DNA of 64,000 bases, from positions 168,534-232,533 of IMG/VR virus record IMGVR_UViG_3300010389_000001; one strand, written 5' to 3'. Below, in pieces: positions 1,258-63,952 of the stretch. A program made the translations under genes and the position numbers. The notes beneath the pieces were generated by a model. That model made no database searches, had not been told where the DNA came from, and saw only the letters and a program-made list of their open reading frames with translations. The stretch's first letter is position 1; each line of letters starts with the position of its first letter.

Positions 1258-4200
1258 ATGGCTAAGTCAAATTACCCGGATAAGTTAGATACATCGATTG
1301 AGATACCAGCAGTTAGAGACAACATAGTTGAGGTAGGTTCTGATGTTATCAATAGCTTAAGGGCTGCAATATTTCAAATAGAAAGAACTCTAGGAATAAA
1401 TCCGCAGGGTGCCACTGGTAATACTGTAGCCAGCCGTATCGGAAAATCATTAGATTCTAATGGAAATATATTAAAAGAGGCGCTAGACTCTGCCGGCTTG
1501 CTATCCGGTCCCGTATCAGACAAGGATATATCAAAAACTGCTGCAATCAATGAATCAAAGCTAAATCTTGATTACCCAACAACTCTGCTTCAGGACGAAA
1601 TTTCACAAATAACAAGTCAGCTCGATCTTATCGAGTCTGCCGTAAACGACCTTTCGACGACTTTGGCCATCCATATCAATCCTCTTGCTACAGGAAGGCA
1701 TAGTGGTATTGCGATTAATATAGATGCTATATCCAGCACCGGCTCTGGGGACGGAATTACCTCATTGGAAGCAACGACTTCTCAGGGCGCCTTTGAAAGC
1801 TTGTTCTCATCTCATATCAATTATGATGGAACTAATATATCTGCAGATAATCGCTCGCATTTATCTAGCCAGATCTTCTTTGATAACAACAATGTATCAA
1901 CTTACATTCCCTCATCAGACACCCAAGGCGCAATAGAGGACCTCGTAGACACCATAATTGGTCAGGCAGATGTTCATCAGAACTTATTCCATTCAAATTC
2001 AATTGAAAGATCATCACTTTTGGTTGATCCCAATAATCCAGCTCGCGGAACTCAAATTATATCTAATGAAGCAGCAACTTATCCTGCATCTGTAGCCTCT
2101 TCTGATCTAGGAGTTTCTAGGATTTTTCTCACGGACACCCCGAGCAGCCCTGAAGAAGCGATTGATATATCCGATATACTTGTAGTAACAAACATTGATG
2201 AAGAAACTGAATATCAGGTATTTCAGGCAAATTATTCTTCAGACGGGTTAAAGCTAGAATCGCTAGATGTTTATGGAAGATTTCCCGAGGCATCGCCAGC
2301 GGGAATAACCGTAAGTTTATATCGCAACAAAAATAGAGAATCAAGTAGCGCTGGCTTGCTTATTGGTGTTAGAGAATATGATTCATTAGATGGAACATCT
2401 TATACAAATGCTGATATTATTCAGATTTCAAACCCGAGTGCTACGAATATAGTTACAAAAAAAATAAAGCCTCAGGAAATTACAGATCTAAATAGATACA
2501 TAGAAATTTCAATTGATGACACTCCGCCTGTTGAGCTAGATCTATACGATCCTTCTCTGTCACTGACCGGGATTAGTCAAAATATAAACTCTATTGTAAA
2601 AAGATTAAATGAGCAATTTACTGCGAATAGGCTAAGCGCATCTGCCTATAGAGTTGACTATGATGATTCTAACTCTAGCGAGATTGCAATTGTTCACTCC
2701 ATAGGCAATTCAACCACCTCAGAGCATACGATTAAGATCTCAAGGGGCTCGGATGATGCAATTGACTCACTTGGCCTATCTGAGATAGATGACAAAACTA
2801 TTGTTGGAACAGTAGGTAATAGCTTTTATATTCAAGGAAAGGGATATAATGATCTTGCTATTCTTCTTGATGAAACCGGATTAATTCTAACGGGCGGTAC
2901 ATCCGAGATATTCTTGGGCAACATTAATCCAATTGAGTTGGGCGTAAAGGTTGGGGATGTTATTTCCATTTTTGGCTCAACTGCCGATGATGGAACTTAT
3001 GTAATTACGTCTATTTCAAGCAATACCATTATTGTAAATCGGGAGCAGCTGCCCGGCAGACAGTGGGCCTCCCTGGCCGGAGAAGATGCAAGATTTGTCG
3101 TATACTCTAGAGCCGCGTCCCTTAATGGAATGGCTTTCAAAGGCACACTTGGCGGATCCTCTATTTTATCTATAATTGAATTATTTTTAGATAAGAATAG
3201 AATATTAAACTATAATGAACTGCTAACTTATGGGCAGGAGTCATACCTTGGTTCGGAAAATTTAGTTTCTCCATGTAATGTATTTGGAAAAACGGAGAAT
3301 TATACCGAAGATAATCCTGGAACTTTGCTAATAGAAAAAGCTTTGCCGGATCCGGCTAACGAAGAAGTTTTGATATCACTAGATGGCGGAGAAAAAGTTA
3401 GTATCTATAAAGCCAAGAGCAATTATGTTACGGTATACTCTGGAAAATATGATTTATCTTTAACCCTATTTATTGCAGATTCAGGACTAATTAATACAAA
3501 GCTGGTTGCAGATGGAAGTTCATTTGAGATTAGCTTATTTGGCTATAAGTCTGTAAATAAAGAAGAAAATATTATTCTAGGAAAAGTCCTTTACGAATCA
3601 GGTGTATCTAGGATATCAGGATTTGGCAGAAGCTACCCAAGAGTCTTCAGGGATCTGAGAAAAGGCGTGACTGGAACAAAAGATCTTGGAAGCGATGTAA
3701 GAAAAGATATTTTAATACAGCCTCATTTAGATAAGCGATCAAATGGAGTAGTAAGAGGTCTGGAAGTCTTTGATGTTGTTGATAACGGAGATACTTATAC
3801 TCTTAGTATTGCTTCCGGAACTTGCTATGTAAGGGGCAAGAGGTTTGAAGTAAGCGAGTACGAAGGATATATAACGGACATAGTAACGGCAGGCTCACCA
3901 CCGTCTGTCGATAAATTCTTTGTTGCTATAGACGAATGGGGGCAGATCGTATTTTCTCCGGCAGACCCAGTAAGTTGCGGCTGCATGCTTGATCCAGCTT
4001 ATTACTGTATACTAGCATCTGTAGAAAATAACCTTAGCACAATCAATGCTATAGATCTCAGGTTGTTTATTGACGATCTTGATCTTAAGATTCTAAACTC
4101 CATAACCGTCAGTCCGCAGGATGGAATGGCACATTTTTCAGAAATCCCAAAGGCTCTAAGGTACGCCAAAAGATTCTCTGAAATCTTCCCTAACGCTGGC

Positions 4201-5817
4201 ACTCCAACTATACATCTGAAGTCTGGCACTCACAGGGTCGTTGTTGATCACGGCGTAGATCTAGCGGATGCCGACGCAAGCATAAAAGCTCAAGAAAGAT
4301 ATAACCAAGGAATGTGGATTAACTTCCCCGTAAACATAATTGGTGAAGGCGAGTCGACCATTCTGGACATGATATATGCATACAACGACCTGCCGGAAGG
4401 TTCGGATAACAGAACCTCTCCTGGCACAGATATGCTTGGAGAAATCACAATAGCAGGACCCGGCTTTACAGAAACTCCGTCTGGAGCATCCGATGTAGTC
4501 AATTCCGGATATGTAAGCCTATCCAATTTTAAAGTCAGACTTGGTTCAATAAAAGTATTTGATGCTTTAATATCTGATGCAGGTCCTATCGATTTCGGCG
4601 TTAATATGAGCGAAGTAATATTCGATTTCTCAGAAAAAGAAAGCTTTGAATTTCAGAATGCCGGTGTGATAATAAGAAATCAAAGCCTAACTGCGACCGA
4701 CCCCGCTGGAAATATAAATATTAATGACTGCATTTTTATAAATAGCAATATAACAATAGGCGGAATTCAAACAGAATATTTCTTTAACTCAATTATATCT
4801 AATAATGTATTTAAATCTCAAGAAACTCCTCCGACCGAAGGCGCTACAAACTACGCTATACGCTGCACGGCATCTGGAAATATATTTAGCTTTGATGATT
4901 GTCCTTCAGAAAATAATGTAAACATTATTGGAAATATTATCGGAGACAACTTTATCCCCAATAGGGATAGTGGTGGACCTACGATTGATCATGACGGAGA
5001 TTATCCCTGGGGAGAAAGATTCAGCAGAGATGTCAATATTGGTTCCAAGCTAAGCGTTGTAAAGAATGCGGTAATTGACGGATCTACATCAGTCGGTGTT
5101 GACTTAGAGGTAGGTAATGACGCCTCAATTGCAGGAGCGCTTTCTGTAGGCACCACTATAGAGGCTGCGTCATCTGTGACTGCGCAAGAATACCTATACG
5201 GAGTTACCACAAAGAAGATTAACACCAAGTTCTTTGCGGAGGATATCGGGTGGACCGCTGTTAATGATCAGTACAGAGCTTATTATGAGCCTGGAAGCTC
5301 TTTCACAGGATCTACTACAGTCTTCTGCAGAGAGGCTGAAATATATCGCACCACTGGTGCAGCACCAGAAGAATTCGGCTTACCTGTTCGATATTTTGAA
5401 ATACCTGATAATTCATTTAGAACTTCATTTAGAATAAAACTTACTCCTGGCTCAAAAATAGAGCGCATCGGAATTGGAGCCCTTGTCAATAAGGGCGGCG
5501 GACCAACGGCCCCAAGCACACTGACTCCGGGAACGGAAGTAACACTAAGCTTGTATAAGCTAGATGCAGATGGAGATCTTTTATCAAATCCGTTAATACT
5601 TGTTGGATCAGAAATTTTTGAAACAAGCCTAAATTTAACTGACTTTTTTGAAGAATATACTTTTAACTTTTCTTCGTATAATGAAACTGTTGATATAACA
5701 GATAATCATTATCTAGTATCCATAAGCCATGATGATCCGTCTAATGATCTAAGCGTTGCATACCTAAGGGTCAGGACTGAAATAAGCTCGGTAGAAGAAG
5801 GAATTGGAGCCTCGTAA
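1258..5817 (+). CDS. large virion protein, tailspike/tail-fibre-like (paralog 1)
   Basis: 1519 aa, beta-rich and acidic. N-terminal region is paralogous to 5817..9440. The segment after TIHLKSGTH resembles a parallel beta-helix (N/I-rich: ININDCIFINSNI, ISNNVF, VNIIGNII), followed by 6-residue beta repeats (~5030-5185) and a C-terminal beta-sandwich-like region. Confidence 0.6.
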   Translation: MAKSNYPDKLDTSIEIPAVRDNIVEVGSDVINSLRAAIFQIERTLGINPQGATGNTVASRIGKSLDSNGNILKEALDSAGLLSGPVSDKDISKTAAINESKLNLDYPTTLLQDEISQITSQLDLIESAVNDLSTTLAIHINPLATGRHSGIAINIDAISSTGSGDGITSLEATTSQGAFESLFSSHINYDGTNISADNRSHLSSQIFFDNNNVSTYIPSSDTQGAIEDLVDTIIGQADVHQNLFHSNSIERSSLLVDPNNPARGTQIISNEAATYPASVASSDLGVSRIFLTDTPSSPEEAIDISDILVVTNIDEETEYQVFQANYSSDGLKLESLDVYGRFPEASPAGITVSLYRNKNRESSSAGLLIGVREYDSLDGTSYTNADIIQISNPSATNIVTKKIKPQEITDLNRYIEISIDDTPPVELDLYDPSLSLTGISQNINSIVKRLNEQFTANRLSASAYRVDYDDSNSSEIAIVHSIGNSTTSEHTIKISRGSDDAIDSLGLSEIDDKTIVGTVGNSFYIQGKGYNDLAILLDETGLILTGGTSEIFLGNINPIELGVKVGDVISIFGSTADDGTYVITSISSNTIIVNREQLPGRQWASLAGEDARFVVYSRAASLNGMAFKGTLGGSSILSIIELFLDKNRILNYNELLTYGQESYLGSENLVSPCNVFGKTENYTEDNPGTLLIEKALPDPANEEVLISLDGGEKVSIYKAKSNYVTVYSGKYDLSLTLFIADSGLINTKLVADGSSFEISLFGYKSVNKEENIILGKVLYESGVSRISGFGRSYPRVFRDLRKGVTGTKDLGSDVRKDILIQPHLDKRSNGVVRGLEVFDVVDNGDTYTLSIASGTCYVRGKRFEVSEYEGYITDIVTAGSPPSVDKFFVAIDEWGQIVFSPADPVSCGCMLDPAYYCILASVENNLSTINAIDLRLFIDDLDLKILNSITVSPQDGMAHFSEIPKALRYAKRFSEIFPNAGTPTIHLKSGTHRVVVDHGVDLADADASIKAQERYNQGMWINFPVNIIGEGESTILDMIYAYNDLPEGSDNRTSPGTDMLGEITIAGPGFTETPSGASDVVNSGYVSLSNFKVRLGSIKVFDALISDAGPIDFGVNMSEVIFDFSEKESFEFQNAGVIIRNQSLTATDPAGNININDCIFINSNITIGGIQTEYFFNSIISNNVFKSQETPPTEGATNYAIRCTASGNIFSFDDCPSENNVNIIGNIIGDNFIPNRDSGGPTIDHDGDYPWGERFSRDVNIGSKLSVVKNAVIDGSTSVGVDLEVGNDASIAGALSVGTTIEAASSVTAQEYLYGVTTKKINTKFFAEDIGWTAVNDQYRAYYEPGSSFTGSTTVFCREAEIYRTTGAAPEEFGLPVRYFEIPDNSFRTSFRIKLTPGSKIERIGIGALVNKGGGPTAPSTLTPGTEVTLSLYKLDADGDLLSNPLILVGSEIFETSLNLTDFFEEYTFNFSSYNETVDITDNHYLVSISHDDPSNDLSVAYLRVRTEISSVEEGIGAS

Positions 5818-8800
5818 TGTCTAAGTCAAATTATCCGGAAAAATTAGACACATCTGTTGAGATTCCTGCCGTAAGAGACAATGTTACGGAAATTGGATCG
5901 GATGTTCTCAACAGCCTTCGTTCGGCCATATTTAATATCGAAAGAACACTTGGCATCAATCCCCAGGGAGTTGCCGGAAATACTCTGGCCTCTAGGCTGG
6001 CAAACTTAATAGATGAAAATGGAAATCTAAAAGACGAAGCCCTAGTTAAAGCTGGCATTTTATCTGGCCCAATATCTGATAAAGATGTTTCAAAGACTGC
6101 TGCAATAAAAGAATTTAAGTTAGATTTGGATTATCCTACGACTCTTCTTCAGGATGAGATATCTATTTTAGATTCAAAAATCCAGCAATTTGTCGAAGCA
6201 ATAAATGAATTAAATGCAATTGTTTCAACACATGTTAACCAAAATGCAATAAATCGCCATCTTGCAAAAGCCATAACTGTAGAAGAAGCTGATATTGTGC
6301 CATCTGATGTAGGATTGAATTCAATAGAAGCGCAGGGCCTGCAGGAGTTTATTCAAGCTCTTTTTAACTCCCACATATCATACACTGGCACTAATATATC
6401 AGAGGCCAATAATTCTCATAAAGCTGACCAGATTTTTTACGATAACTCAGAGAATAGCGATATCATATTATCCAATAGCGTTCAGGGCGCAATAGACGAT
6501 CTTGCGGATATCGAAGGAGTTGGACTAAGGAGTTCCATATTACAGCTAAACTCTAACGGAAGAATAAGAACTGGCTCCCAAATAGATGCATTTGAGGGGA
6601 ATGATTCTGGAAGCCTTATAGTCGATCTAACGGAAATTACTTATGCAGATTACTCCGGCGCATCAACGACTGAGATTTCTTTCAGCGAATCTCCAAGCCT
6701 CCTGCTTGATATAAATAAATTTGATATTCTAGAAATCTCAGAATCTTTAAATGAAGATGATAATGGCGAATATGTAATAGCCTCTTTTCAGACCAATGTA
6801 GATGATACCTTGAGTTCTGTAACTATATTCGGTGGACCAAAGAGCAGCTTTACTAGCGGCACTCTTGCTAGAGTTAAGAAGAATACTTATCAGGTCCATA
6901 ACAGGAACGGCCTAAATTGCTCCGTCAGGCCCAGGGCAGGCTTCACAAATACTCCGTCGATTCAGGCGGCTATGCCAAACTCCGCAACAGTTATATCTTC
7001 TAGAGCTGACTTTTCAAGGCTAGAGAGTGGTGTTTACGAAAATCTATCATTAGAAATAGATGGAGGCGCTGCTATAGACATTCCTGTGTATAGCTCTGAT
7101 TATTCAATCCATAATGTAGATATTGCGGTTTCTAATATAAACAGATATTGTGTTCAAAATAATCTGAATATATTTGCTTATAAACTAAGAACAAATAGCT
7201 GCTATGAACTTGCTATATCGCATAACATTCCAAATCACTCTGCGGATACAAAGGTTAGATCATTAAAAGTTGTTCAATCTGGCTCCTTGGATGCATCAGG
7301 CATTCTTGGTTTTGAAGATTTAGTAGACAAAGAGATTCGAGGATCATTTGGAAACTCCTTCCACATCAACGGGCTAATACTAAATGAATTCGGCTCGGTA
7401 AAAACTTATACAGGGTCAACAATTACAATTGGGTCTGGAACAACAACTCTTGAAACATTAGAGTTAAACTTCCTGGAGCTTGGAATAAGGGTTGGCGATC
7501 TTTGCGTAATAGATGGATCATCTGTAGATTCAGATAATGGTACTTACACAGTAAATGCTGTTGAAAGCGATAGAGTAACGCTAGACTACACAACAAGCTT
7601 GTTTAGCGGCGAAGCAGATGAAAGTTCTTTATTTACATTTATAAGATGCACTGCACCCATATCTGAGCTAAACTTTATTGATATTAATGGATCGATGCTT
7701 CTTGATATTTTTGCCGATGAGAATCTTAATATTCATCATAACAGAAGAGCAGATATAGTAGGCTCCTTTAACTCGTCGAATTTCTTCTTGGTTGTAACAG
7801 ACATATCTAAAAACTTTATAACCGAAGAAGATCAGTATACGTTAAGGGTTAAAAATGATGGCTTGGCGTCGATCAAGCTTTCTTCTGGCGGCAGCTATGG
7901 CGAAGAGGTGTTCGTAGGAAGCACTGGAGACTACATAATTCCTTTCTCGGACGGTATGGAGTTTATCAAGGTAAAGGTATTCGTTCCGAATGAGGCCTCT
8001 CCAATATTTGTGCCATCATCTTTAACAATAGATATAATTGGATATTCAGAAATACCAGATAGCGTTCTTCATCTTTCTCGCTGTCTTTTCTCCCCAGAAT
8101 TTGGCACAGTAATAGAGGATATAAACGCTGGGCTTGGAGAGACGGGTGCTGTAGGTCTAATTGACAAAAGAATTTCAGGAACAGTCGATGATACCATTAT
8201 ATCCGAACCATTTTTAGAGAGATATATTCAGGGGCCAAGAAATGAGCTTAGATCAAATGGAATCATAAGAGGTCTTGAGATTTTAAATCTAAGCTTATCT
8301 TCCGGAGTTGCTACGTTCGATGTAACACCAGGAATAGTCGTTGTTAATGGTCTAAGAGTCGAATTCTTAGGAAAAGAAGGATTTACATTTGACTATTCAA
8401 CGGGGGCAACTGACAGCTTTTACATAGCCATAGACAACGAGGGGTGCATAAAAGCTTTAAGCGAAGTAGATAAAACTGGAGGAACAGATTATAGTTCTGC
8501 ATTTTCTCCAGAGACAAATTTACACATAGCATATTATGATTCTAATTTATCTGAGCTATATGATTTAAGATTCTTTATAGACAGAATTGATTACAAGATA
8601 CTAAACCAGTTAATTGTTTCTCCCGAAAAACACTTTGGACAATTTAGTAGTTTGGATAGCGCTGTAAAATATTGCAGAGTTTTTTCAAAAATATTTAAAG
8701 ACCAAAGCAAGCCAAAGATCACTCTTGCTCCGGGTACACACATTGTTAATAATGAAATTTTTATAGACTTTGACTTAGAGATAGAGGGAGCGGGACCAGA

Positions 8801-11072: not shown

Positions 11073-11079
11073 AATGAAA

Positions 11080-16993: not shown

Positions 16994-16998
16994 TGCGG

Positions 16999-56241: not shown

Positions 56242-56598
56242 ATGAATAGACTTAATAGATTAGCGCGCATATTAAAAATTGCTCAGATGTCTGATGCTGG
56301 TTCCGAAGATCATAAGATCAGACAAACCGAGGAGCGCGCAGGCATGACTCTAGAAGAATTCGAGAATAAGGTAGCTCGACTAATTTTGAAAGAAAGAATT
56401 AGATCAGAAGAGACAGAAGAGATAGGCATCGAGATGGATATGAGTGAACTAGAAATTGATGGCCCTACAATGGTCAGGGCGCTCTTAGACGGTGCCGATA
56501 AAGTGGCTGATCCTGCGTTCTTCCCATACACATTCTTGAGCGAAAGAAAGACTCCTGAAGATTATTTTAATTTTCTGAAGCAGAATGGCGTTATCTAA
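56242..56598 (+). CDS. hypothetical protein (118 aa)
   Basis: Co-oriented ORF with a GAGA purine tract upstream; no recognised motif. Confidence 0.6.
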   Translation: MNRLNRLARILKIAQMSDAGSEDHKIRQTEERAGMTLEEFENKVARLILKERIRSEETEEIGIEMDMSELEIDGPTMVRALLDGADKVADPAFFPYTFLSERKTPEDYFNFLKQNGVI

Positions 56599-56640: not shown

Positions 56641-57723
56641 ATGAAAAATGTAAATATTCGCTGCGAGTCTATGCTTGGAACAAGCCATAGCTGGGCTGTT
56701 ACTATGCGGAATCTTTTGGGCAGTCTACATGACCTTGGCTGCGACCTTCATCTGAAAAGCATCAATGGAACCTCACTTTTGCCGGCAAAATTGAGTCGGC
56801 TTATCCGAGATGTAAGTGATCCTGATATAGATATCGCTTATACGCTTCCGAGAAATTTCGAGCATAGGTTTAAGAAGAATGCAAAGCTTAAGTTGGCCAT
56901 CTATAACTATGAAACAAGTATCATGCCCCAGGTCTGGAGAGATTCTATAAAGCATATTGATTATGCCCTGCCCTCTTCACACTTTTCTAAAAAAGTTTTT
57001 GTAGACTCAGGTTGGCCAGAAGATAAATGCATAGTAGTTCCTCACGGAATTAATTTATCTGACTTTAGTAACAAGAAAAAAATAAAGCTAACTAATGATA
57101 GTAGATTTAGATTTTTAAACGTTTCTATACCTCATTATAGAAAAAATTTAGATCGTCTTATTGATGCTTATTACACTGCTTTCACAAATAAAGATGACGT
57201 ATGCCTGGTGCTAAAGACAAGCTTAAAGGCGCCAAAAAATTATTTTGAGTGTGACGTAAAAAAGCAGCTGATGATTGTTCAAAATAAGCATAGAAAGAGA
57301 ACCGATCTGCCCATGATCGAAATTGTTCAAAAAAGGTACGAAAGCATAGTGCCCCTATATAACGCTTGTGATGCCCTTGTGAGCGCCACATCCGCCGAAG
57401 GCTTCGGGCTACCCCTACTAGAGGGTCTGGCGGCAGGAATGATCGTTGTAGCCCCTCGCTTCTCTGGTCATCTTGATTTTCTTACGGACAAGAACTCTGT
57501 TCTTTACGATTATAAGATCGTTGATGCAGAAAAGCGGTATCAATATTGGCGGCCAACGCCGGGGGCTACAACGAGCCTGCCCGATATAAAGGCTCTCGCA
57601 GAGTCGATGCACAAAGTATATCGCAATCACGCTTCTCTCAAGGCTAAGTTTAGAAAAAATGCTCTAGAGACTGCAAAAAGATTTACTTGGGAGAATGCCG
57701 CAAAAAGCATTTTGGAAATATAA
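56641..57723 (+). CDS. GT-B fold glycosyltransferase, GT4-like (1 of 7)
   Basis: SATSAEGFGLPLLEGLAAG (E-x7-E motif), HYRKNLDRLIDAY, terminal RFTWENAA. Confidence 0.9.
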   Translation: MKNVNIRCESMLGTSHSWAVTMRNLLGSLHDLGCDLHLKSINGTSLLPAKLSRLIRDVSDPDIDIAYTLPRNFEHRFKKNAKLKLAIYNYETSIMPQVWRDSIKHIDYALPSSHFSKKVFVDSGWPEDKCIVVPHGINLSDFSNKKKIKLTNDSRFRFLNVSIPHYRKNLDRLIDAYYTAFTNKDDVCLVLKTSLKAPKNYFECDVKKQLMIVQNKHRKRTDLPMIEIVQKRYESIVPLYNACDALVSATSAEGFGLPLLEGLAAGMIVVAPRFSGHLDFLTDKNSVLYDYKIVDAEKRYQYWRPTPGATTSLPDIKALAESMHKVYRNHASLKAKFRKNALETAKRFTWENAAKSILEI

Positions 57724-59213
57724 TGATTGTTCTAGATTTAAAAAATAAAAAAGACTGGAATATGAATGGCGTAAACTGTGAATCTAGCGTAAAAATGAAT
57801 AATAAAGGTTATTTTTATTCATTTATTGATAAGCCTGGTGAATACGAGTTTCGTATATTATCAAAAAATATTTCAGGTAATGGTCTTTTTTATTTAAGGG
57901 TAGTTAGCGAAAAAGATAAAATATTGTTCAATAAAAAGATAAAGTTTACATCAAAAAGCTGGAATGAATCAATCTTTAAAATAAGCTTAAAAGACTTTGG
58001 CAAAAAAGCAAAAGTCCTGATAACAAGAGAGCTTGACGGAATTGGCAGGATAGAAATCGGAAGACTTACCGTTAAGATTTCGGAAGAAGTTCTTCCGAAG
58101 GAATCTAAAAGACAAAAATCTATAGCGGACAATAAGCTTATAAGATGCGAGTCTGCAGTTCGCGCTGCAGTCATTATTCCATATGCAATATACGGCGGAG
58201 CAGAAGTTTATTTAAGAAATTTATTCTGCCACAGACCTGCTGGACTAGAGGTAGATTTTTTATTTTTAAAACCAAATAAGTTATCAGATTATCTAAAAGA
58301 ATATGACTGCTTTAATCTTGGAAGCTTAAGCAAATTGAAGCATCAGCTGATAAAAGAAAATTATGATAAAATTATTTACTACAACAGCAAAAGTGTATAT
58401 TCTTTTATTTTAAATTTAAAGCAGAATAATCTTATTTGCTCCGATTTAATAGAAATATATCATAGCAATTTTAAGTGGTCTGATTCATTATCTTCGCTAA
58501 ACTCAAGGAGCGGCATATCCAAGATAATTAGAGTTGCTGATAATCTGTGCAATGATATTTCCGGAGACTTTAGCCTAAAAACAATACCTGTAAGCATAGA
58601 TGTTGAAAAATATAAGCCGAAAGACTCCCCGATCAAAGAGCTTATTGGGGAAGGAGAAGGGGGCATGCTCTTTGGGATGGTTGCTCGCCTGTCTCCCGAA
58701 AAGAATATATCGTATGCTATCGATTTATTTAAGCGATTGAGCAATCATAGGCTGATTGTAATCGGAGATGGCCCGTTGCGCAATAGTCTCAAAGAAAAAA
58801 TAGTCAAAGAAAAAATTGATAATGTAAAGCTTATTGGTTACAAAGAAAATGTTTATGAATATTATAATTTATTAGATGTTTTTTTGCTTACCTCAAAGTT
58901 TGAAGGAACGCCAATATCTATAATTGAAGCTATGTCGTATAATCTTCCTATATTTACAACGGATGTCGGAGAAATAAGAGCTTCTCTATCTTATGTAGAA
59001 GGAATAGGTTATCTAACCGGGGAGTTGGATGAGGATGCGAAAATGATAAGTGATTTTAAATTTGATGAATCTATAAATTGTAGAGAGTGGGTCCTAAAAA
59101 ATAATAATTCACTTATTAATTCGAGCATGTTCTTTGGCGAGATAATTGGAAATTCTCTAACTTACTCAGAGTTAGATTTATCTTTGCCAATTTTAAGCGG
59201 AGCTTATTTTTAA
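57723..59213 (+). CDS. GT4-like glycosyltransferase with an extra N-terminal beta-sandwich region (2 of 7)
   Basis: YGGAEVY, VARLSPEKNI, LTSKFEGTPISIIEAMSY. Start placed at ATG 57723 (TAATG overlap) rather than the tracked TTG 57687. Confidence 0.85.
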   Translation: MIVLDLKNKKDWNMNGVNCESSVKMNNKGYFYSFIDKPGEYEFRILSKNISGNGLFYLRVVSEKDKILFNKKIKFTSKSWNESIFKISLKDFGKKAKVLITRELDGIGRIEIGRLTVKISEEVLPKESKRQKSIADNKLIRCESAVRAAVIIPYAIYGGAEVYLRNLFCHRPAGLEVDFLFLKPNKLSDYLKEYDCFNLGSLSKLKHQLIKENYDKIIYYNSKSVYSFILNLKQNNLICSDLIEIYHSNFKWSDSLSSLNSRSGISKIIRVADNLCNDISGDFSLKTIPVSIDVEKYKPKDSPIKELIGEGEGGMLFGMVARLSPEKNISYAIDLFKRLSNHRLIVIGDGPLRNSLKEKIVKEKIDNVKLIGYKENVYEYYNLLDVFLLTSKFEGTPISIIEAMSYNLPIFTTDVGEIRASLSYVEGIGYLTGELDEDAKMISDFKFDESINCREWVLKNNNSLINSSMFFGEIIGNSLTYSELDLSLPILSGAYF

Positions 59214-60310
59214 TGACCCAGAGATCAATAAGATTATTCGGTAATCCCCAGGATTTTACAGGATATGGAAACGCCACTCAGGCTATATCCATGGCCCTTG
59301 ATTTATCCGGGATACCGACAAAGTATGTCTTCTCTGGGCCAAATAAGCATTTCTCAAAAAAGCTTCGTCAACATAACTGTAAACCTGATGTTGATTTATA
59401 CATACAAACTCCCCCATTTTCTAGGCACAGGTCTCTGAATTATAGAATTGGGTATTTTTACTGGGAAACGGATAAACTACCGAACTTGTGGGCTAAAGAC
59501 ATAAAGACAAGTCTGGATGAGATATGGGCTCCATGCCAACTTGTAAAAGATGTTTGCTTAAAGGCCGGCTTCAAGGGTCCAATTAAAATAATTCCTACGC
59601 CAGCTCTGAGCCCCACGTCAAGCTCTAAAATACAAATTCCATCTAAATTTAAAAATTTAGTTTTAGATGAAAGCGTATTTAAATTTTATTCAATTTTTCA
59701 ATGGAATGAGCGAAAAGGATATCATAAGTTAATAAAAAGTTATTATGAAGAATTTTCATCTAAAGATAATGTGATCTTGATCCTAAAGGTTAATCCAATT
59801 AACCATAAGCTTCACGGAATGCAAAAAATAAAAGATGATATTTTAAAAATAAGATCGCTAGTTAAGAGGTCAAAAAAAGATTTACCAAAAATCTTCTTGT
59901 CCACAGATCATATCGATCGCCATCTTTTAGACGCTCTACATCATACTTGTGATGCGTTCGTTCTCCCTCACCATGGAGAGGGGTGGGGTATGCCAATACA
60001 TGATGCAATCAACCATAATAATTTTATAATTACAACGAAGTATGGAGGAGTAACTGAATGGCTAAATAATGAGAACTCCTTTATAATAAAGCATTCTATG
60101 ACAGCCGCAAAGTCCATGAATTGGAATCCATGGTATGAGCCAAGTCAAAGGTGGGCAAATCCAAGTGCCAATAGCTTAAAGAGGCAGATGAGAAGCTGCT
60201 ATGAAGACAGAAATAACTTTGATTATAAGAAGGAAAATCTAAATCAAATTACTAATTTATTTACTATAGATAAGTGCGCTCTTAATATTAAGAAAGCATT
60301 AGAAGCGTAG
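59213..60310 (+). CDS. GT4-like glycosyltransferase (3 of 7)
   Basis: TGYGNAT, FYWETDKLP, QWNERKGYHKLI, LPHHGEGWGMPIHDA; paralogous to 56641..57723. Confidence 0.88.
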   Translation: MTQRSIRLFGNPQDFTGYGNATQAISMALDLSGIPTKYVFSGPNKHFSKKLRQHNCKPDVDLYIQTPPFSRHRSLNYRIGYFYWETDKLPNLWAKDIKTSLDEIWAPCQLVKDVCLKAGFKGPIKIIPTPALSPTSSSKIQIPSKFKNLVLDESVFKFYSIFQWNERKGYHKLIKSYYEEFSSKDNVILILKVNPINHKLHGMQKIKDDILKIRSLVKRSKKDLPKIFLSTDHIDRHLLDALHHTCDAFVLPHHGEGWGMPIHDAINHNNFIITTKYGGVTEWLNNENSFIIKHSMTAAKSMNWNPWYEPSQRWANPSANSLKRQMRSCYEDRNNFDYKKENLNQITNLFTIDKCALNIKKALEA

Positions 60311-60316
60311 TTCGTT

Positions 60317-61252
60317 ATGTCAAAAAGATATATTATAGCAGATTGGCTAGTGCATGGCGGTCATCAATATGAGTTTTTTAAAACTGGGCATGACTTCTTC
60401 TGCGCTAACCCGGATGGCTCCGCGCCTGATCCAAAGTCATTGGGCCGACCGATAAATGAAAATGTGAAGTATGTAAAACAAAGCGCTCTTCAGGAAAAGA
60501 GGGTTTCCATTATAATGGTAAGAAGCCCTATTAAGGCAGAAAAGTACAATCGCCTTAGAGGAAAGTACGCCTTTAATAAGCCTCCTGGTATTGCGGTAGT
60601 GCAGACAACAAATCCTTTTGTTCCACCAAGATGGGTGCGATGCGTTGTGTGGAACTCTGAGCATTGTATGAAGTTACATTCTAAAGCAATCGGTTGGGCA
60701 AAGCACTTCTATATTCCGCACGGCTTTGATCCGAATGAATTTAGCAACCTGGGGCTGCAGAGAAATGGCAAAATGCTCGGCGCAGGAAGCCTGTATAGGC
60801 AAAGAGACAATCTATTGGGTTATCGCGAATGGAGGTGGGTTGCAGATCGTCTAAAGGATCGCTGCGCCCTCATAGGGCACGGAAATGACGACCCAGAGTC
60901 AATAGGCAGCCACTCTCTCGATCGCTTGGTAAAGATATATAATGAGCATTCCGTATTTCTAAATACAACAAAACATAGTGCTATGCCGAGAACCAGAGCG
61001 GAGGCCATGATGTGCGGCATGCCGCTTGTTTCTACCGCAAATTATGGTATAGAAAAATATCTTATAAACGGAAAAAATTGTATTATAGCAAATGGCAAGC
61101 AGGATATGCTAGAGGGAGTGAAAAAGATATTGGACTCGCCTTCGATGCAGGAAGATTTTTCTTCGGCCTCAAGAGAAACTGCTTTAAAATACTTTCATAT
61201 AAATGAGTATCTTAATAGATGGAAACAAGTTTTTGAAGAGGCTTTAAAATGA
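60317..61252 (+). CDS. GT-B glycosyltransferase (4 of 7)
   Basis: YIPHGFD, FLNTTKHSAMPRTRAEAMMCGMPLVST, LINGKNCII, RWKQVF. Confidence 0.82.
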   Translation: MSKRYIIADWLVHGGHQYEFFKTGHDFFCANPDGSAPDPKSLGRPINENVKYVKQSALQEKRVSIIMVRSPIKAEKYNRLRGKYAFNKPPGIAVVQTTNPFVPPRWVRCVVWNSEHCMKLHSKAIGWAKHFYIPHGFDPNEFSNLGLQRNGKMLGAGSLYRQRDNLLGYREWRWVADRLKDRCALIGHGNDDPESIGSHSLDRLVKIYNEHSVFLNTTKHSAMPRTRAEAMMCGMPLVSTANYGIEKYLINGKNCIIANGKQDMLEGVKKILDSPSMQEDFSSASRETALKYFHINEYLNRWKQVFEEALK

Positions 61253-62115
61253 AAAAAATACTGCTTTTAACTGACTCTTATAATTGGGCTACTTATTTTA
61301 GAGCAGTAAATCTTAAGCATAATTTAAAAAACTATGATTTTACAATTCTATCCTTCGAAGATAAGCACAAAGTAGATTTTAATGATTTTGATATTGTTTA
61401 CATAACAAATTGGCCAATATACGGATACGTTCGAGATAAAATTTCTAGCAGAAGAGGCTACAAGCTCGTTACCGGAGTATCAAGTCATATAGGCAGGAAA
61501 AGCGCGCGTGAAATGAGAACATTTTTTTCCTCTTTTGACGCTATAGGTCTTTCAAATAACTTTTTAATGAAAGAATTCGCTAGTGCAAAATTTAAAAAGC
61601 TTGTTTATACGCCATTTGGTGTAAATCATAATATCTTTAATAAAAAAACAAATCCGGCGGACTACAAACACGTATTTGGATGGGTTGGCAATAAAGATAG
61701 GCCGGTAAAGCGATATTCCGAAATAAAAGAAGCAATACAAAGCTTGGGCACAACATATGAGCTGAGAACCGTTGGAAGCTCTAACAATTTTTCCAGGGAA
61801 AAGATGGCAAAATTTTACAACTCTATAGGTACCCTTATTTGCTTCAGCGAATCAGAGGGCACTCCGAATCCAGTATTGGAGGCCGCCATGTGTGGGAGGG
61901 CCATAATTTCTACAAATGTAGGCAATGTTCCTCAGCTGATGTCTAAGGTAAGGGAGTTTACTCCAATAGACTCTAGAAAATCTCTTATAGATCAAATTTT
62001 TGAATATAAGAATAAGAAAGACCTTGCATCTTTCGGGTCAGATATAGAGGCGATTGCGAAAAGGGAGTGGACCTGGGAGAGGCAATCAAAAAGATTCGTA
62101 AAATTATTCGAGTAA
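61249..62115 (+). CDS. GT4-like glycosyltransferase (5 of 7)
   Basis: TPFGVNHNIF, FGWVGN, CFSESEGTPNPVLEAAMCGRAIISTNVG, WTWERQ. Confidence 0.88.
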   Translation: MKKILLLTDSYNWATYFRAVNLKHNLKNYDFTILSFEDKHKVDFNDFDIVYITNWPIYGYVRDKISSRRGYKLVTGVSSHIGRKSAREMRTFFSSFDAIGLSNNFLMKEFASAKFKKLVYTPFGVNHNIFNKKTNPADYKHVFGWVGNKDRPVKRYSEIKEAIQSLGTTYELRTVGSSNNFSREKMAKFYNSIGTLICFSESEGTPNPVLEAAMCGRAIISTNVGNVPQLMSKVREFTPIDSRKSLIDQIFEYKNKKDLASFGSDIEAIAKREWTWERQSKRFVKLFE

Positions 62116-62118
62116 ATC

Positions 62119-63141
62119 ATGCAAAGAATTTTAATTACAAGTACTCAATACCCCTATTATGGCGGTGCGGCAACAAACGCATATGCTTTAATAAAGCATT
62201 TTAGAAAGCTAGGCATAAAAGTATGTGGTACATTTTTCGAAGAGAAAAGCGTAAATGCTGATCCAGACTCTATTGGAGGAGTATTTCTTGCCTCAAAGAA
62301 AGATGTGCAAAGTTGTAAAAAAAAGATAAATCAGTATCTAAAAGGAGAGCCCGATGTTGTGCTTTGCAAAAATTACGTTGCGCCAGTCTTGTCCAGGAAG
62401 ATTTATCCAAATTCAAAAATATTTTACTTAGCTTCTGGCTGTCCCCACATGATGGAGCTATCATCAAAAGATATATCTGCAATTAAATACTTAAAATCAT
62501 CTAGGTCTATAGAATTTGCTGCTGAAAAAAGCGCGATAAAATCTTCTGACTTTATTGTTCCAAATAGCGAAATTGGAAGAAGATTGCTGCAAAAACATTA
62601 TGGCAATTCAAAGAAAATTTTAAACTCATTCAATACATCGCTTGAAATAAATAGAAAGCCCAGATCCATTGAGTTTGATCGTAGAAATTATGACATAGGC
62701 TTTATATGCTCTAATTTTAATAGAACAGTAAAGAACTCAAGATTAGCTTTATCTATTTTTAGTAATTTTAAATCAAATAAAAAAATTGCCATAGGAAATA
62801 ACTCATCTGCTTTTAAATCAGTAGACAGAACTACAGTTATGAACTCTAAAGATAATGACTTTATCATAAGGACTCTTTCACAAACAAAATTGATTATCTG
62901 CCCATCTTATTACGATGCATCACCAAATATCGTGCGAGAAGCTATTTTATGCGGATGCAATGTTTTGGTTTCAAAAAACTGCGGATGGAGTGAGGCTTAC
63001 CCAAGAACAAGCGTGTGTGAAGATATCTATGATAAAAAAGAGTGGGTCGCTAAGGCGAAATTTTTAGTTAAACGAAATGTAAAATATGACTACAAATATA
63101 ATGCAGATATAGTCAGATATCTTGAGGGTGCATTAAAATGA
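62119..63141 (+). CDS. GT-B glycosyltransferase (6 of 7)
   Basis: PYYGGAATN, VPNSE, RTVKNSRL, ICPSYYDASPNIVREAILCGC. Confidence 0.8.
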   Translation: MQRILITSTQYPYYGGAATNAYALIKHFRKLGIKVCGTFFEEKSVNADPDSIGGVFLASKKDVQSCKKKINQYLKGEPDVVLCKNYVAPVLSRKIYPNSKIFYLASGCPHMMELSSKDISAIKYLKSSRSIEFAAEKSAIKSSDFIVPNSEIGRRLLQKHYGNSKKILNSFNTSLEINRKPRSIEFDRRNYDIGFICSNFNRTVKNSRLALSIFSNFKSNKKIAIGNNSSAFKSVDRTTVMNSKDNDFIIRTLSQTKLIICPSYYDASPNIVREAILCGCNVLVSKNCGWSEAYPRTSVCEDIYDKKEWVAKAKFLVKRNVKYDYKYNADIVRYLEGALK

Positions 63142-63952
63142 AAAGAGTTTTATTTATAGTTGATAAGCCGGGCTGGGCCTATGATGATGCAGCTCAAAAT
63201 TGGAAAAGACTACTTTGCAAAGAATATAAAATAGATATTCTACATCTGGCTGAATATGATGGCGTTCGCCCAGATCATAGATTTTACGGACTAATTAAAG
63301 AATATCAAGATTGTGCAATAAATAATCAATCTGCAGATTTAAAAGATTTAATATCAGAAAAAAATTTGTTTTTATGCAAAGGAATTAAGGCAGAGCCAGT
63401 TTTTGATCATAATAATTATGATATAATTTATTTATTTTATCACAGAGCACTATGTGATTCAAGGCTTCTTGCTACACCAATCCCACTTGAAAAAGTTGTA
63501 ATTGCTATAAATAATGAAAAGTGGACAGATCTTGGCGCAAAAAAAGAATATGATACATATATGAAGGGAGTGGGCGGCATTTCTGTATGCAACTCTTTTG
63601 TTGAAAAATCTTTCAGTGGATTAAACCCAAATATTTTTAGAGTCTCTCAATCTATTAACAAAGATGTATTTTTCAAAATAAAAGATAATGCCAAAAGTAA
63701 TCGTTTTATAGCCGGCTGGTCTGGCAATTATAAAAATCCTTTAAAAAATTTTGAACTAATAAAAGAAGCTATTTCAAATACTAAAGCTAGATTTACCTAT
63801 GCGAATAACCTTTCCAGAAAAGAGCTTAACGTATGGTATAATAACATAAACTGCGTGGTATGCGCTAGTGTGTCTGAGGGCGGCCCCCTTATGCTCTTGG
63901 AAGCCGGAGCAGTGGGGCTTCCTGTGATAACCTCTAAAGTTGGGTTGGCTAG
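63138..63952 (+). CDS. GT4-like glycosyltransferase, 3'-truncated (7 of 7; absent from the ORF track)
   Basis: ATGA overlap with the previous gene; my translation reads MKRVLFIVDKPGWAYDD...AGWSGNYKNPLKNF...CASVSEGGPLMLLEAGAVGLPVITSKVGL and then runs into adapter sequence. Confidence 0.85.

What the first reader, a model, noticed from the sequence alone, without database searches (positions are those of the whole stretch)
1258..63952. Hypertrophied contractile-tail operon with adhesin-type modules running directly into a glycosyltransferase array
Seen: the canonical myophage order (sheath, tube, G/GT, TMP, initiator, hub, spike, gp25, J, wedge) is intact, but most parts are inflated: sheath 1091, hub 1624, J 1106, wedge 3245 aa. 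Knowledge: T4 gp18, gp27, gp6 and gp7 are 659, 391, 660 and 1032 aa. The proteins carry LamG-, Ig/invasin- and dockerin-like modules and many Cys, and seven GTs follow on the same strand. Inference: an undescribed jumbo-phage tail machine that is heavily decorated, possibly glycosylated, and built for glycan-rich or unusual host envelopes.
Basis: partly seen in the sequence, partly recalled or inferred. Interest (0 to 1): 0.72.

Follow-up and report, generated by a model that had tools for sequence, protein, structure and literature searches.

The report
Giant phage tail with sugar-enzyme island
This is the tail and baseplate gene block of an uncultured marine or sediment jumbo phage distantly related to Bacillus phage G, with several parts roughly doubled in size and a block of sugar-transferase genes attached in every relative checked, so the phage may coat its own particle with sugars.

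Summary
The observation largely holds. Window 1258-56217 is a complete contractile-tail and baseplate module. It is followed on the same strand by six whole GT4 glycosyltransferase genes and a seventh cut off by Illumina adapter at the contig end. The window is the last 64 kb of a 232.5-kb IMG metagenome contig that also carries terminase, portal and capsid genes.

At least 62 IMG/VR loci hold the same 1091-aa-type sheath. Complete relatives reach 335 kb with terminal repeats. The nearest cultured relative is Bacillus phage G (capsid 53% identical). Its tail module matches gene for gene, but its sheath, hub-position protein and J are about half the size. The tape measure here is short (639 aa against 2893 aa).

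Three giant proteins (2614, 3245, 1521 aa) are clade-specific orphans.

The GT array follows the 1521-aa gene in all seven relatives with data. In a complete genome it opens a roughly 28-kb island of soluble sugar enzymes. That island has no membrane export genes. The genomes have no hydroxymethylase for DNA glycosylation.

Virion glycosylation is the best reading (about 0.4) but is unproven. "Many Cys" and Ig/invasin modules were not confirmed.

The parts
1258..5817 (+). 1519-aa fibre- or tailspike-like protein, paralogue A
   Evidence: 32% identical over about 1090 aa to the next gene, and about 70% over the first 130 aa. No Pfam or PDB match. Only a weak Atlas lead to pectate-lyase/beta-helix proteins, score 0.79. 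Orthologues of 1155-1747 aa occur in over 25 relatives.
5817..9440 (+). 1207-aa paralogue B of the same family
9424..9882 (+). 152-aa protein with a prealbumin/CarboxypepD_reg beta-sandwich
   Evidence: Pfam PF13620 E 1.1e-8. HMM match to phage G gp174.
10266..11072 (+). 268-aa conserved protein just upstream of the sheath; candidate tail terminator or completion protein
   Evidence: 55-96% identical in 47 relatives. HMM 1.5e-12 to phage G gp177, which sits directly upstream of the phage G sheath. Function inferred from position.
11131..14406 (+). Tail sheath, 1091 aa
   Evidence: PHROG 2839/279. AlphaFold2 pLDDT 72.8. Foldseek and VIA hits to sheaths of phi812, T4 gp18, phiCD508 and others. 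Clade HMM positions about 10-42, 399-515 and 874-1068 align with phage G gp178; the rest is extra.
14430..14460 (+). GC-rich hairpin plus T-run after the sheath gene (terminator-like)
   Evidence: Read directly from the sequence.
14461..16206 (+). Free-standing homing endonuclease, 581 aa, 4.65% Cys; an insertion, not a tail part
   Evidence: phrog_3339 1e-38 and phrog_559 5e-33. Absent from this site in G002, whose homologue lies at 216 kb.
16308..16937 (+). Tail tube, 209 aa
   Evidence: phrog_985. HMM 1.8e-22 to phage G gp180 and 1e-15 to gp179. 55-91% identical in 64 loci.
17024..17943 (+). Tail assembly chaperones G/GT with a programmed -1 frameshift (slippery site 17500-17506, hairpin 17510-17537)
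   Evidence: 31 of 31 relatives. HMM 9.5e-20 to phage G gp181, an annotated frameshifted chaperone.
17943..19862 (+). Tape measure protein, 639 aa (assigned by position)
   Evidence: Pfam TMP_3 E 0.005. Lies between G/GT and the gp184 homologue, as in phage G. Length is 588-688 aa across relatives.
19862..20821 (+). 319-aa tube-initiator or hub-proximal protein
   Evidence: Pfam Phage_tail_tube_init E 0.002. HMM 2.8e-17 to phage G gp184.
20852..25726 (+). 1624-aa hub-position protein
   Evidence: HMM 2e-14 and hhalign 94% to phage G gp185, 840 aa. Atlas lead to GpP/Mu gp44-like hubs. No direct match to Mu gp44 or to the PDB.
25737..28100 (+). 787-aa central spike candidate
   Evidence: Atlas feature hits to Gp5_OB/Phage_base_V clusters, score 0.92 with 173 shared features. 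The AlphaFold2 model failed, pLDDT 31. No PDB profile hit.
28154..35998 (+). 2614-aa clade-specific protein with a central block of 4-5 membrane-type helices (residues about 1608-1752)
   Evidence: (block present in all 34 homologous clusters). No Pfam, PHROG or PDB match. No phage G counterpart.
36001..38037 (+). 678-aa baseplate-region protein, function unknown
   Evidence: Orthologues in relatives. No family match.
38097..38528 (+). Sheath initiator, gp25-like, 143 aa
   Evidence: Pfam PF10934. phrog_2669. HMM 4e-12 to phage G gp187.
38537..41857 (+). Baseplate J / gp6-like protein, 1106 aa
   Evidence: Pfam Baseplate_J 6e-26. phrog_6 9e-43. Clade HMM positions 4-301 and 952-1065 align with phage G gp188 (619 aa), which implies an insert of about 650 aa.
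41866..51603 (+). 3245-aa peripheral baseplate giant with one LamG domain (about residues 2144-2233); 'wedge' by position only
   Evidence: Pfam PF13385. 42 homologous clusters, most of them 3158-3320 aa (a few shorter or partial, some up to 4736 aa), at 30-78% identity. No PDB or phage G match.
51652..56217 (+). 1521-aa terminal structural protein; fibre or receptor-binding candidate
   Evidence: Length conserved at 1511-1532 aa in relatives. Weak Dockerin_1 hits in two orthologues. No other match.
56242..56598 (+). 118-aa acidic ORF, not conserved
   Evidence: Absent in L002 and G002.
56641..63141 (+). Six complete GT4 glycosyltransferase genes (360, 508, 365, 311, 288, 340 aa), overlapping or 3-6 nt apart
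   Evidence: Pfam. phrog_2170. EX7E motif in GT1, GT2 and GT5. GT1-GT4 are syntenic orthologues in L004 and G002. No membrane-type segments.
63141..63952 (+). Seventh GT4 gene, cut off by the contig end
   Evidence: Pfam. EX7E motif at residue 246.
63953..64000 (.). Illumina Nextera adapter and index; not biological sequence

Best explanation
SHOWN: the region is the late morphogenesis block of an uncultured jumbo or mega phage. It comes from JGI metagenome 3300010389, and near-identical DNA occurs in marine, aquaculture and sediment runs. The block encodes a contractile tail whose parts match those of Bacillus phage G gene for gene: gp174, gp177, sheath, tube, frameshifted chaperones, TMP slot, gp184, gp185, gp25-like and J. 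The sheath, the hub-position protein and J carry inserts of several hundred residues. The clade also adds orphan giants of 2614, 678, 3245 and 1521 aa, plus a pair of 1519/1207-aa fibre-like paralogues upstream of the sheath.

INFERRED mechanism: a short tail (639-aa tape measure, about 95 nm at 0.15 nm per residue) sits on a very large baseplate. The baseplate-side genes from the 319-aa protein to the 1521-aa protein total about 12,000 aa. The peripheral giants (LamG-bearing 3245 aa and 1521 aa) bind the host surface and trigger the J/gp25/sheath contraction. The spike candidate leads the tube through the envelope. The 2614-aa protein encoded next to it, with its conserved block of membrane-type helices, is delivered into or anchored in the host membrane as part of the DNA conduit.

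SHOWN: the GT4 array that follows is an ancestral, co-inherited part of this block, not a recent add-on.

INFERRED: it is expressed with the late genes. Together with the phage's own nucleotide-sugar, methyl-, acetyl- and sulfo-transferase genes, seen in complete relatives, it builds a glycan in the cytoplasm on a soluble acceptor. The most likely acceptors are virion proteins.

My confidence is about 0.9 for the tail-module part and about 0.4 for virion glycosylation. The figure below is for the whole statement.
For: Phage identity: TerL, portal, a protease-domain protein and MCP lie upstream. The MCP is 53% identical to phage G gp27. There are 62 IMG/VR loci with the full-length sheath, on contigs up to 335 kb with terminal repeats.

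Collinear homology with phage G and location of the inserts.

Sheath fold.

G/GT frameshift.

gp25 and J.

Length conservation of the giants across 30-82% identity.

Membrane-type block in the 2614-aa family.

GT linkage: the 1521-aa homologue is directly followed by GT4 genes in G001, G002 (8 in a row), G003 (4), G004 (up to 11), L002, L004 and L126.

Vertical descent of the GTs: GT1-GT5 diverge from their G002 orthologues (32-52%) about as much as the baseplate proteins do (41-48%).

Coupling: GT genes overlap or lie 3-6 nt apart, and no terminator-like site lies between the 1521-aa gene and GT1.

Soluble pathway: all 28 island genes in G002, and every GT in the window, lack membrane-type segments.

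Island contents in G002 and L004: NTP-transferase, UDP-Glc/GDP-Man dehydrogenase, epimerase, GDP-mannose 4,6-dehydratase, sulfotransferase, methyltransferase, hexapeptide acyltransferases, AsnB-like amidotransferase and GT2.

No thymidylate-synthase-type hydroxymethylase in five genomes, two of them complete.

Precedent: phage-encoded GTs glycosylate the capsid and tail tube of mycobacteriophages (Freeman et al. 2023, as cited in PMC12619734).
Against: There is no direct evidence of glycosylated virion proteins, of the timing of expression, or of the acceptor.

GT4 enzymes commonly act on lipid-linked or small-molecule acceptors, and the phage could use the host's carrier lipid, flippase and polymerase.

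No GT reaches any NCBIfam equivalog cut-off, so specificity is unknown. GT3, GT4 and GT6 lack a canonical EX7E motif.

The hub and spike names rest on position, on homology to an unannotated phage G protein, and on language-model leads. The spike model failed and hhalign to Mu gp44/gp45 found nothing.

The role proposed for the 2614-aa protein is pure inference. It may not be a virion protein at all.

The tail-length estimate assumes the usual TMP scaling.

The contig is incomplete (CheckV 68%). It begins and ends inside GT genes, so the window's own island is not fully seen.
Confidence: 0.5

Rival explanations
1. The GT island remodels the host's envelope glycans (LPS O-antigen, capsule, S-layer or wall polymers) during infection. 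The purpose would be to block superinfection or to stop progeny sticking to debris. It would use host carrier lipid and export machinery, and the virion itself would not be glycosylated.
For: GT4, GT2, nucleotide-sugar enzymes, acyl- and methyl-transferases are the normal content of bacterial surface-polysaccharide loci. The weak NCBIfam similarities are to TuaC, Pgl, Tvi, Eps and Pel enzymes. A 2026 preprint treats huge-phage GTs as envelope-associated genes.
Against: None of the 28 island genes in the complete relative has a membrane-type segment, so there is no priming phosphoglycosyl transferase, flippase, polymerase or ABC exporter. The island is fixed to the end of the baseplate genes across the whole clade and diverges at the same rate as they do. 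That pattern is not typical of host-takeover morons.
Confidence: 0.25
2. The GTs hypermodify the phage DNA with sugars to evade restriction, as T4 glucosyltransferases and other DNA-glycosylating phage GTs do.
For: Phage GTs are classically DNA-modifying. PMC12619734 lists this as one option for jumbo-phage GTs.
Against: No thymidylate-synthase-family hydroxymethylase is present in five genomes, two of them complete. Four to eleven GT4 genes plus a sulfotransferase and sugar-nucleotide enzymes are far more than known DNA systems use. The island sits in the late structural block, not with the replication genes.
Confidence: 0.08
3. The GT island makes a non-virion, non-envelope product for metabolic takeover, such as a glycolipid, a compatible solute or a storage glycan.
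For: Weak similarities to BshA, MshA, glycogen and sucrose-phosphate synthases and to MGlcDAG synthase. GTs are among the commonest auxiliary genes in huge phages.
Against: These similarities are generic to the GT4 fold and lie far below family cut-offs. The conserved position after the baseplate genes is unexplained by this reading.
Confidence: 0.12
4. The junction of tail genes and GT array is an assembly chimera, or the locus is a bacterial contractile injection system or tailocin rather than a phage.
For: Both contig ends carry sequencing adapter. Two 46-kb relatives end within about 145 nt after the 1521-aa gene. IMG/VR labels one relative a provirus.
Against: The same junction occurs in seven independent relatives at 35-82% identity. 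Both sides are present at similar depth in four independent runs. TerL, portal and MCP lie on the same contig and strand. A relative is complete with terminal repeats.
Confidence: 0.02

Closest known systems
Bacillus phage G (Donellivirus gee) tail module, gp174-gp189
   Same: The MCP is 53% identical. The gene order is the same, and HMM-level homology covers gp174, gp177, sheath gp178, tube gp179/180, frameshifted chaperone gp181/182, gp184, gp185, the gp25-like gp187 and the J-like gp188.
   Different: In phage G the sheath is 579 aa, gp185 840 aa and J 619 aa, against 1091, 1624 and 1106 aa here. Its TMP is 2893 aa against 639 aa here. It has no counterpart of the 2614-, 3245- or 1521-aa proteins, and no GT gene is annotated in the ~35 kb after its baseplate genes. 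Its host is a soil Bacillus; this clade comes from marine and sediment samples.
Mycobacteriophage virion glycosylation (Freeman et al. 2023, cited in PMC12619734)
   Same: Phage-encoded glycosyltransferases act in the cytoplasm on structural proteins. The MCP here is distantly related (about 29% identity) to MCPs of large actinophage myoviruses (Mycobacterium phage HyRo, Rhodococcus phages E3 and Finch).
   Different: From recollection, those phages have only a few GT genes, whereas this clade has 4-11 GT4 genes plus its own sugar-nucleotide, sulfo-, methyl- and acyl-transferases. Glycosylation here is not demonstrated.
Glycosylation machinery of giant eukaryotic viruses (chlorovirus capsid glycans, mimivirus fibrils); from general knowledge, not tested here
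   Same: Virus-encoded GDP-mannose 4,6-dehydratase, UDP-glucose dehydrogenase-type enzymes and many soluble GTs build virion glycans without host export machinery. The G002 island has the same kinds of enzymes.
   Different: Different virus realm and different hosts. No sequence relationship was examined.
Moraphages (Perez-Hernandez et al. 2025, PMC12619734)
   Same: Aquatic jumbo phages of 200-307 kb with four core GT orthogroups, sigma factors, PhoH, homing endonucleases and an unrecognised TMP. Here sigma factors are present, PhoH is present in G002 and G003, and four to five GT orthologues are conserved.
   Different: Their marker family-B DNA polymerase is absent from G000 and from two (near-)complete relatives. 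There is no DnaK in G000 and no Clp-type AAA_2 domain. The DNA polymerase here matches phrog_405, and the capsid is of the phage G type. Their sequences are on Zenodo and could not be compared directly.
T4 baseplate and tail (gp18, gp19, gp5, gp27, gp25, gp6, gp7)
   Different: No sequence or profile link for hub, spike or wedge. The gene order is the P2/Mu/phage G type with a G/GT frameshift and a TMP. The sizes are 1.6-4 times larger.
Other oversized sheaths, e.g. cyanophage S-TIM5 (1137 aa), S-WAM1 (932 aa) and uncultured Caudovirales A0A6J5RGN8 (952 aa)
   Same: A sheath core with large inserted domains. A0A6J5RGN8 matches at Foldseek E 1e-70 and 29% identity. Metagenomic sheaths of 1166-1525 aa share the C-terminal core.
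   Different: Those come from different lineages. The inserts were not shown to be homologous.

Membership tests
Contractile (myovirus-type) phage tail module | Tail sheath protein with the conserved sheath fold | tested here: met
Contractile (myovirus-type) phage tail module | Tube protein, G/GT chaperones with a -1 frameshift, and a tape measure gene directly downstream | tested here: met
   Tube. Frameshift in 31 of 31 relatives. TMP by position plus a weak Pfam hit.
Contractile (myovirus-type) phage tail module | gp25-like sheath initiator and gp6/J-like wedge protein | tested here: met
Contractile (myovirus-type) phage tail module | gp27/Mu gp44-type hub and gp5/gpV-type spike | tested here: inconclusive
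   Only Atlas leads and homology of the 1624-aa protein to the unannotated phage G gp185. The spike model failed. There is no PDB profile hit and no hhalign match to Mu gp44/gp45.
Tailed phage rather than tailocin or eCIS | Terminase, portal and major capsid genes in the same replicon | tested here: met
   A complete relative with terminal repeats.
Phage G-like jumbo phage lineage | Shared capsid type and collinear tail module | tested here: met
   MCP 53% identical. Ten collinear HMM matches. Genome-wide gene sharing and the terminase relationship were not tested; no phage G TerL appears among the top TerL hits.
Moraphages (PMC12619734) | Family B DNA polymerase marker (VOG00275, found in nearly all members) | tested here: not met
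   No Pfam DNA_pol_B match in G000, G002 (complete) or G003 (99% complete).
Moraphages (PMC12619734) | Chaperones and ClpA-type ATPase common in the lineage | tested here: not met
   HSP70 absent in G000. AAA_2 absent in three genomes.
Moraphages (PMC12619734) | Direct sequence similarity to the 25 published genomes | not testable with these tools
   The genomes are on Zenodo (10.5281/zenodo.15586673) and are not in the tool collections.
Phage virion-glycosylation system (mycobacteriophage type) | Phage-encoded GTs genetically tied to the structural genes | tested here: met
Phage virion-glycosylation system (mycobacteriophage type) | Glycans attached to capsid or tail proteins | not testable with these tools
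   Needs virions and mass spectrometry.
Wzx/Wzy- or ABC-dependent surface polysaccharide locus | Polytopic membrane components: priming transferase, flippase, polymerase or exporter | tested here: not met
   No membrane-type segment in any of the 28 island genes of G002 or in the window's GTs. This was a hydropathy scan only.
DNA glycosylation system (T4 type) | Hydroxymethyl-pyrimidine synthesis (ThyA-family hydroxymethylase) | tested here: not met
   (0 of 5 genomes)

The most novel reading that the evidence does not exclude
A widespread clade of marine and sediment mega-phages carries a self-sufficient cytoplasmic glycosylation pathway: its own nucleotide-sugar synthesis, 4-11 glycosyltransferases, and sulfo-, methyl- and acyl-transferases. 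The pathway coats an oversized baseplate and its fibres, or the whole virion, with complex and possibly sulfated glycans. That would be a phage counterpart of the glycan coats of giant eukaryotic viruses. In addition, a spike-adjacent protein of about 2600 aa with a multi-helix membrane domain is fired into the host membrane as a new type of DNA-conduit component.
Probability: 0.3. Interest if true: 0.8.

Novelty: new variant of a known kind. Interest (0 to 1): 0.55.

Why it matters
Virion glycosylation in phages has so far been shown only in actinophages with a few GT genes. A conserved island of up to about 28 kb fixed to the baseplate genes of a cosmopolitan, uncultured 230-380-kb phage clade would extend it to aquatic mega-phages. 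It would also give a concrete, testable target: co-express the GTs with structural proteins, or run glycoproteomics on viral fractions.

The comparison with phage G shows how a tail can be rebuilt by inserting domains into the sheath, hub and J while the tape measure shrinks. That is useful for understanding baseplate evolution and host recognition.

The 2614-aa protein with its conserved membrane-helix block is a new candidate for the poorly understood step of membrane crossing by myophages.

For annotation, the work assigns the TMP and the G/GT frameshift in a lineage where these genes were not recognisable by standard family searches. It also flags contigs of this clade that sit inside bacterial and archaeal MAG bins.

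Tried and rejected
- Pfam and PHROG found nothing for the 1519-, 1207-, 787-, 2614-, 678- and 1521-aa proteins, and only a marginal PHROG hit for the 1624-aa protein.
- Pfam Gp23 and Terminase_6N found nothing in the genome. MCP and TerL were found with PHROGs instead.
- The AlphaFold2 model of the spike candidate, built from a 5-sequence alignment, was unusable at pLDDT 31.
- Profile searches against PDB sequences found nothing for hub or spike. Single-sequence searches found nothing for the 3245-, 2614-, 1521- and 1519-aa proteins.
- hhalign of the clade alignments against Mu gp42-gp48 and phage G gp183/186/187/189 gave only hub vs gp185 (94%) and a weak J vs Mu gp47. A first, larger run timed out.
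- BLAST found no internal repeats in the giants.
- NCBIfam gave no equivalog for any GT.
- Read laying showed both sides of the tail/GT junction in four runs, but no single Logan contig spans 56.2-56.6 kb.
- A literature search for the IMG identifiers found nothing. Freeman et al. 2023 is not held in the library.
- Host: sheath relatives sit in MAG bins labelled Chitinophagales, Bacteroidales, Hydrogenedentes and Gammaproteobacteria. Strong GGAG-type ribosome-binding sites precede the genes. No host call was possible.
- I considered that the 2614-aa protein might be the true tape measure. I rejected this because the 639-aa gene occupies the TMP slot between G/GT and the gp184 homologue, as in phage G.

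Full report
**What is in the window**

One strand carries a near-gapless run of genes from 1258 to the end. Family searches identify the following:
- a tail sheath at 11131-14406 (PHROG E 6e-15);
- a homing endonuclease at 14461-16206;
- a tube protein at 16308-16937;
- a weak tape-measure match at 17943-19862;
- a weak tube-initiator match at 19862-20821;
- a gp25-type sheath initiator at 38097-38528;
- a Baseplate_J protein at 38537-41857;
- one LamG domain in the 3245-aa protein;
- six complete GT4 glycosyltransferases at 56641-63141, plus a seventh that starts at 63141.

The last 48 bases of the window are Nextera adapter, as are the first ~44 bases of the contig. The seventh GT is therefore truncated by the assembly, not by biology.

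**Genome context**

- The window is the last 64 kb of a single 232,533-bp contig. The contig is Ga0136549_10000001 of JGI metagenome 3300010389.
- Upstream on the same strand lie the large terminase, the portal, a 1070-aa protein with a head-protease domain and a 336-aa major capsid protein. A DNA polymerase also lies upstream. This is a phage, not a tailocin or injection system.
- CheckV rates the contig 68% complete.
- The contig starts inside the C-terminal part of another GT4 gene. That gene's best match in a complete relative lies 17 kb beyond the match of the window's last GTs. Both contig ends therefore fall inside one glycan island.

**Relatives**

- The sheath finds 62 IMG/VR loci at 45-90% identity, with the same length.
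- These include a 335,169-bp genome with direct terminal repeats (G002), a 332-kb genome (G003), and fragments of 211 kb and 178 kb.
- Gene-by-gene comparison with G002 shows strict collinearity from about 60 kb to the end of the contig. This covers every tail gene.
- The lengths of the giants are conserved across 30-82% identity: hub 1544-1714 aa, J 1104-1107 aa, the 3245-aa family mostly 3158-3320 aa in 42 clusters, the 1521-aa family 1511-1532 aa, and the 2614-aa family mostly 2500-2990 aa in 34 clusters. The large sizes are therefore selected, not annotation noise.
- Near-identical DNA is present in marine, aquaculture and sediment metagenome runs.

**Closest cultured relative and the nature of the hypertrophy**

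The capsid protein is 53% identical to that of Bacillus phage G. HMMs built from this clade hit the phage G tail module in order:

| This clade | Phage G | E-value |
|---|---|---|
| 152 aa | gp174 | 2.5e-5 |
| 268 aa | gp177 | 1.5e-12 |
| sheath | gp178 | 3e-22 |
| tube | gp180 / gp179 | 1.8e-22 / 1e-15 |
| 161-aa chaperone | gp181 | 9.5e-20 |
| 319 aa | gp184 | 2.8e-17 |
| 1624 aa | gp185 | 2e-14 (hhalign 94%) |
| gp25-like | gp187 | 4e-12 |
| J | gp188 | 8e-50 |

- For the sheath and J, the matches cover N- and C-terminal parts. Sheath HMM positions 10-42, 399-515 and 874-1068 align, as do J positions 4-301 and 952-1065. For the 1624-aa protein, only two short segments align (HMM positions 397-453 and 797-853).
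- The doubling relative to phage G (579, 840 and 619 aa) is therefore due to inserted domains.
- A search of 1.84 billion representative proteins agrees. Many shorter sheaths share positions 1-215 and about 745-1074, and other metagenomic sheaths reach 1525 aa.
- In contrast, the tape measure is short here (639 aa; 588-688 aa in relatives) against 2893 aa in phage G. The prediction is a short tail on a very large baseplate.

**Chaperone frameshift**

- ORF 17024-17509 ends in GTA AAA AAA TAG.
- The -1 frame is open from 17494 into ORF 17623-17943.
- A 10-bp hairpin follows at 17510-17537.
- All 31 distinct relatives have a slippery heptamer (AAAAAAA, AAAAAAC, AAAAAAG or TTTAAAA) 3-6 nt before the stop.
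- In all of them the -1 frame stays open for 136-152 codons, and most of them show a hairpin whose arms change in a compensatory way.
- This fixes the G/GT assignment and, by position, the TMP.

**Parts that stay uncertain**

- The hub and spike names rest on three things: gene order, homology to the unannotated gp185, and language-model leads (GpP/Mu gp44-like for the hub, Gp5_OB/Phage_base_V for the spike). The spike model failed. PDB profile searches and hhalign to Mu proteins gave nothing.
- The 3245-aa 'wedge' and the 1521-aa protein have no detectable relatives outside the clade. Their roles are inferred from position.
- The 1519- and 1207-aa proteins upstream of the sheath are paralogues with a shared N-terminal domain and divergent C-termini. 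This pattern is typical of exchangeable fibres or spikes. A beta-helix lead is weak.

The 2614-aa protein is encoded right after the spike candidate. It contains about 80 residues of continuous membrane-type sequence plus one more hydrophobic helix (residues about 1608-1752). The same block is present in all 34 homologous clusters. Neither the TMP here nor any of the 19 phage G tail-region proteins examined has a comparable multi-helix block. I read it as a candidate membrane-inserting component of the injection path. This is inference only.

- Cys is not enriched. The structural proteins have 0.1-1.2% Cys, and only the endonuclease reaches 4.65%.
- No Ig/invasin family was detected.
- Dockerin appears only as weak hits in two orthologues.

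**The glycosyltransferase array: linkage and contents**

The result is the opposite. The 1521-aa homologue is directly followed by GT4 genes in every relative with data:

| Relative | What follows the 1521-aa homologue |
|---|---|
| G001 | GT4 immediately downstream, then the contig ends |
| G002 | eight GT4 genes in a row |
| G003 | four GT4 genes |
| G004 | up to eleven GT4 genes |
| L002 | its last 56 nt align with the start of GT1 |
| L004 | GT array, continuing into other sugar enzymes |
| L126 | GT4 genes; the most distant relative, 35% identity |

- GT1-GT4 are syntenic orthologues. Their divergence from G002 (32-52%) matches that of the baseplate proteins (41-48%), so they are old core genes.
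- In G002 the array opens a roughly 28-kb island. It holds sulfatase-family, sulfotransferase, nucleotidyl-transferase, methyltransferase, UDP-Glc/GDP-Man dehydrogenase, epimerase and AsnB-like genes, a GDP-mannose 4,6-dehydratase that carries a LAGLIDADG insert, and GT2 and GT4 genes.
- L004 adds two hexapeptide acyltransferases.
- None of the island proteins has a membrane-type segment.
- No ThyA-family hydroxymethylase exists in five genomes.
- Genes in the array overlap or lie 3-6 nt apart, and no terminator-like site separates them from the 1521-aa gene. By contrast, clear hairpin-plus-T-run sites follow the sheath and tube genes.

**The glycosyltransferase array: interpretation**

The data fit a soluble, phage-autonomous glycosylation pathway that is made with the late proteins.

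- Virion proteins are the most economical acceptor, by analogy with mycobacteriophages. My confidence is about 0.4.
- Host-envelope remodelling comes next (0.25).
- A non-structural product (0.12) and DNA modification (0.08) follow.
- Nothing here shows a glycan on a protein.

**Known or new**

- No cultured phage is close.
- The published 'moraphages' share several traits, including four core GT groups. However, their marker family-B polymerase is absent from this clade, including from a complete genome. DnaK (in G000) and the Clp-type domain are also absent. I do not file this clade there, although a direct comparison was not possible.
- The kind of thing, a jumbo myophage tail with GT genes nearby, is known. 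Three aspects appear undescribed: this particular architecture, the fixed glycan island, and the membrane-block giant.
- I rate it a new variant of a known kind, with interest 0.55.

Noticed in passing
window 63953-64000; G000:C1:1-44: Both ends of the 232.5-kb contig are Illumina Nextera transposase adapter, with an index at the 3' end. The public record carries untrimmed adapter, and the contig ends are artefacts.
   Followed up: yes
window 14461-16206: A free-standing, Cys-rich (4.65%) homing endonuclease (phrog_3339/559) sits between the sheath and tube genes. G002 has no gene at this site, and its homologue lies elsewhere, at 216 kb. This looks like a mobile insertion into the most highly expressed part of the tail operon.
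   Followed up: partly
window 17494-17540 and 31 related loci: The -1 frameshift site of the chaperone pair has a downstream hairpin whose arms co-vary among relatives, for example GGAGCC/GGCTCC, GAGCTCCC/GGGAGCTC and GGAGTC/GACTCC. No formal covariation statistics were run.
   Followed up: partly
window 28154-35998, residues about 1608-1752: A conserved block of 4-5 membrane-type helices lies in the middle of a 2614-aa orphan protein encoded beside the spike candidate. It contains a local cluster of Cys residues.
   Followed up: partly
G000:C1:118593-121256 and 122402-123364: The DNA polymerase gene (phrog_405) is in two pieces separated by about 1.1 kb. Both pieces match one 1405-aa ORF in G002. 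An intron or a mobile insertion is likely.
   Followed up: no
L076:9723-11867 (G002 189723-191867): The GDP-mannose 4,6-dehydratase of the complete relative is 714 aa and carries a LAGLIDADG domain between its two halves, so it looks intein-like.
   Followed up: no
P0212; L129-L132: A homologue of the 2614-aa protein is deposited at NCBI as a protein of 'Candidatus Pacearchaeota archaeon'. Sheath relatives lie in MAG bins labelled Chitinophagales (383-kb contig), Bacteroidales, Hydrogenedentes and Gammaproteobacteria. These are probably phage contigs binned with cellular genomes.
   Followed up: no
window intergenic regions, e.g. 11073-11130, 16207-16307, 16938-17023, 28101-28153: TATAAT-like boxes and strong GGAG-type ribosome-binding sites precede many late genes. 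GT1 is preceded by TACAAT. The strong Shine-Dalgarno use argues weakly against a Bacteroidota host.
   Followed up: no
G003 (IMGVR_UViG_3300009703_004110): IMG/VR classes this 332-kb, 99%-complete relative as a 'provirus'. That is unexpected for this kind of phage and may be a boundary-calling artefact.
   Followed up: no
window 53418-54143, minus strand: A 241-aa antisense ORF lies inside the 1521-aa gene and has a partial counterpart in G002. It is most likely a by-product of conservation of the sense strand.
   Followed up: no
window 56242-56598: A 118-aa acidic ORF lies between the last structural gene and GT1. It is present here and starts in L003, but is absent in L002 and G002. Two independent runs carry it with a 9-nt deletion at 56405.
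   Followed up: partly
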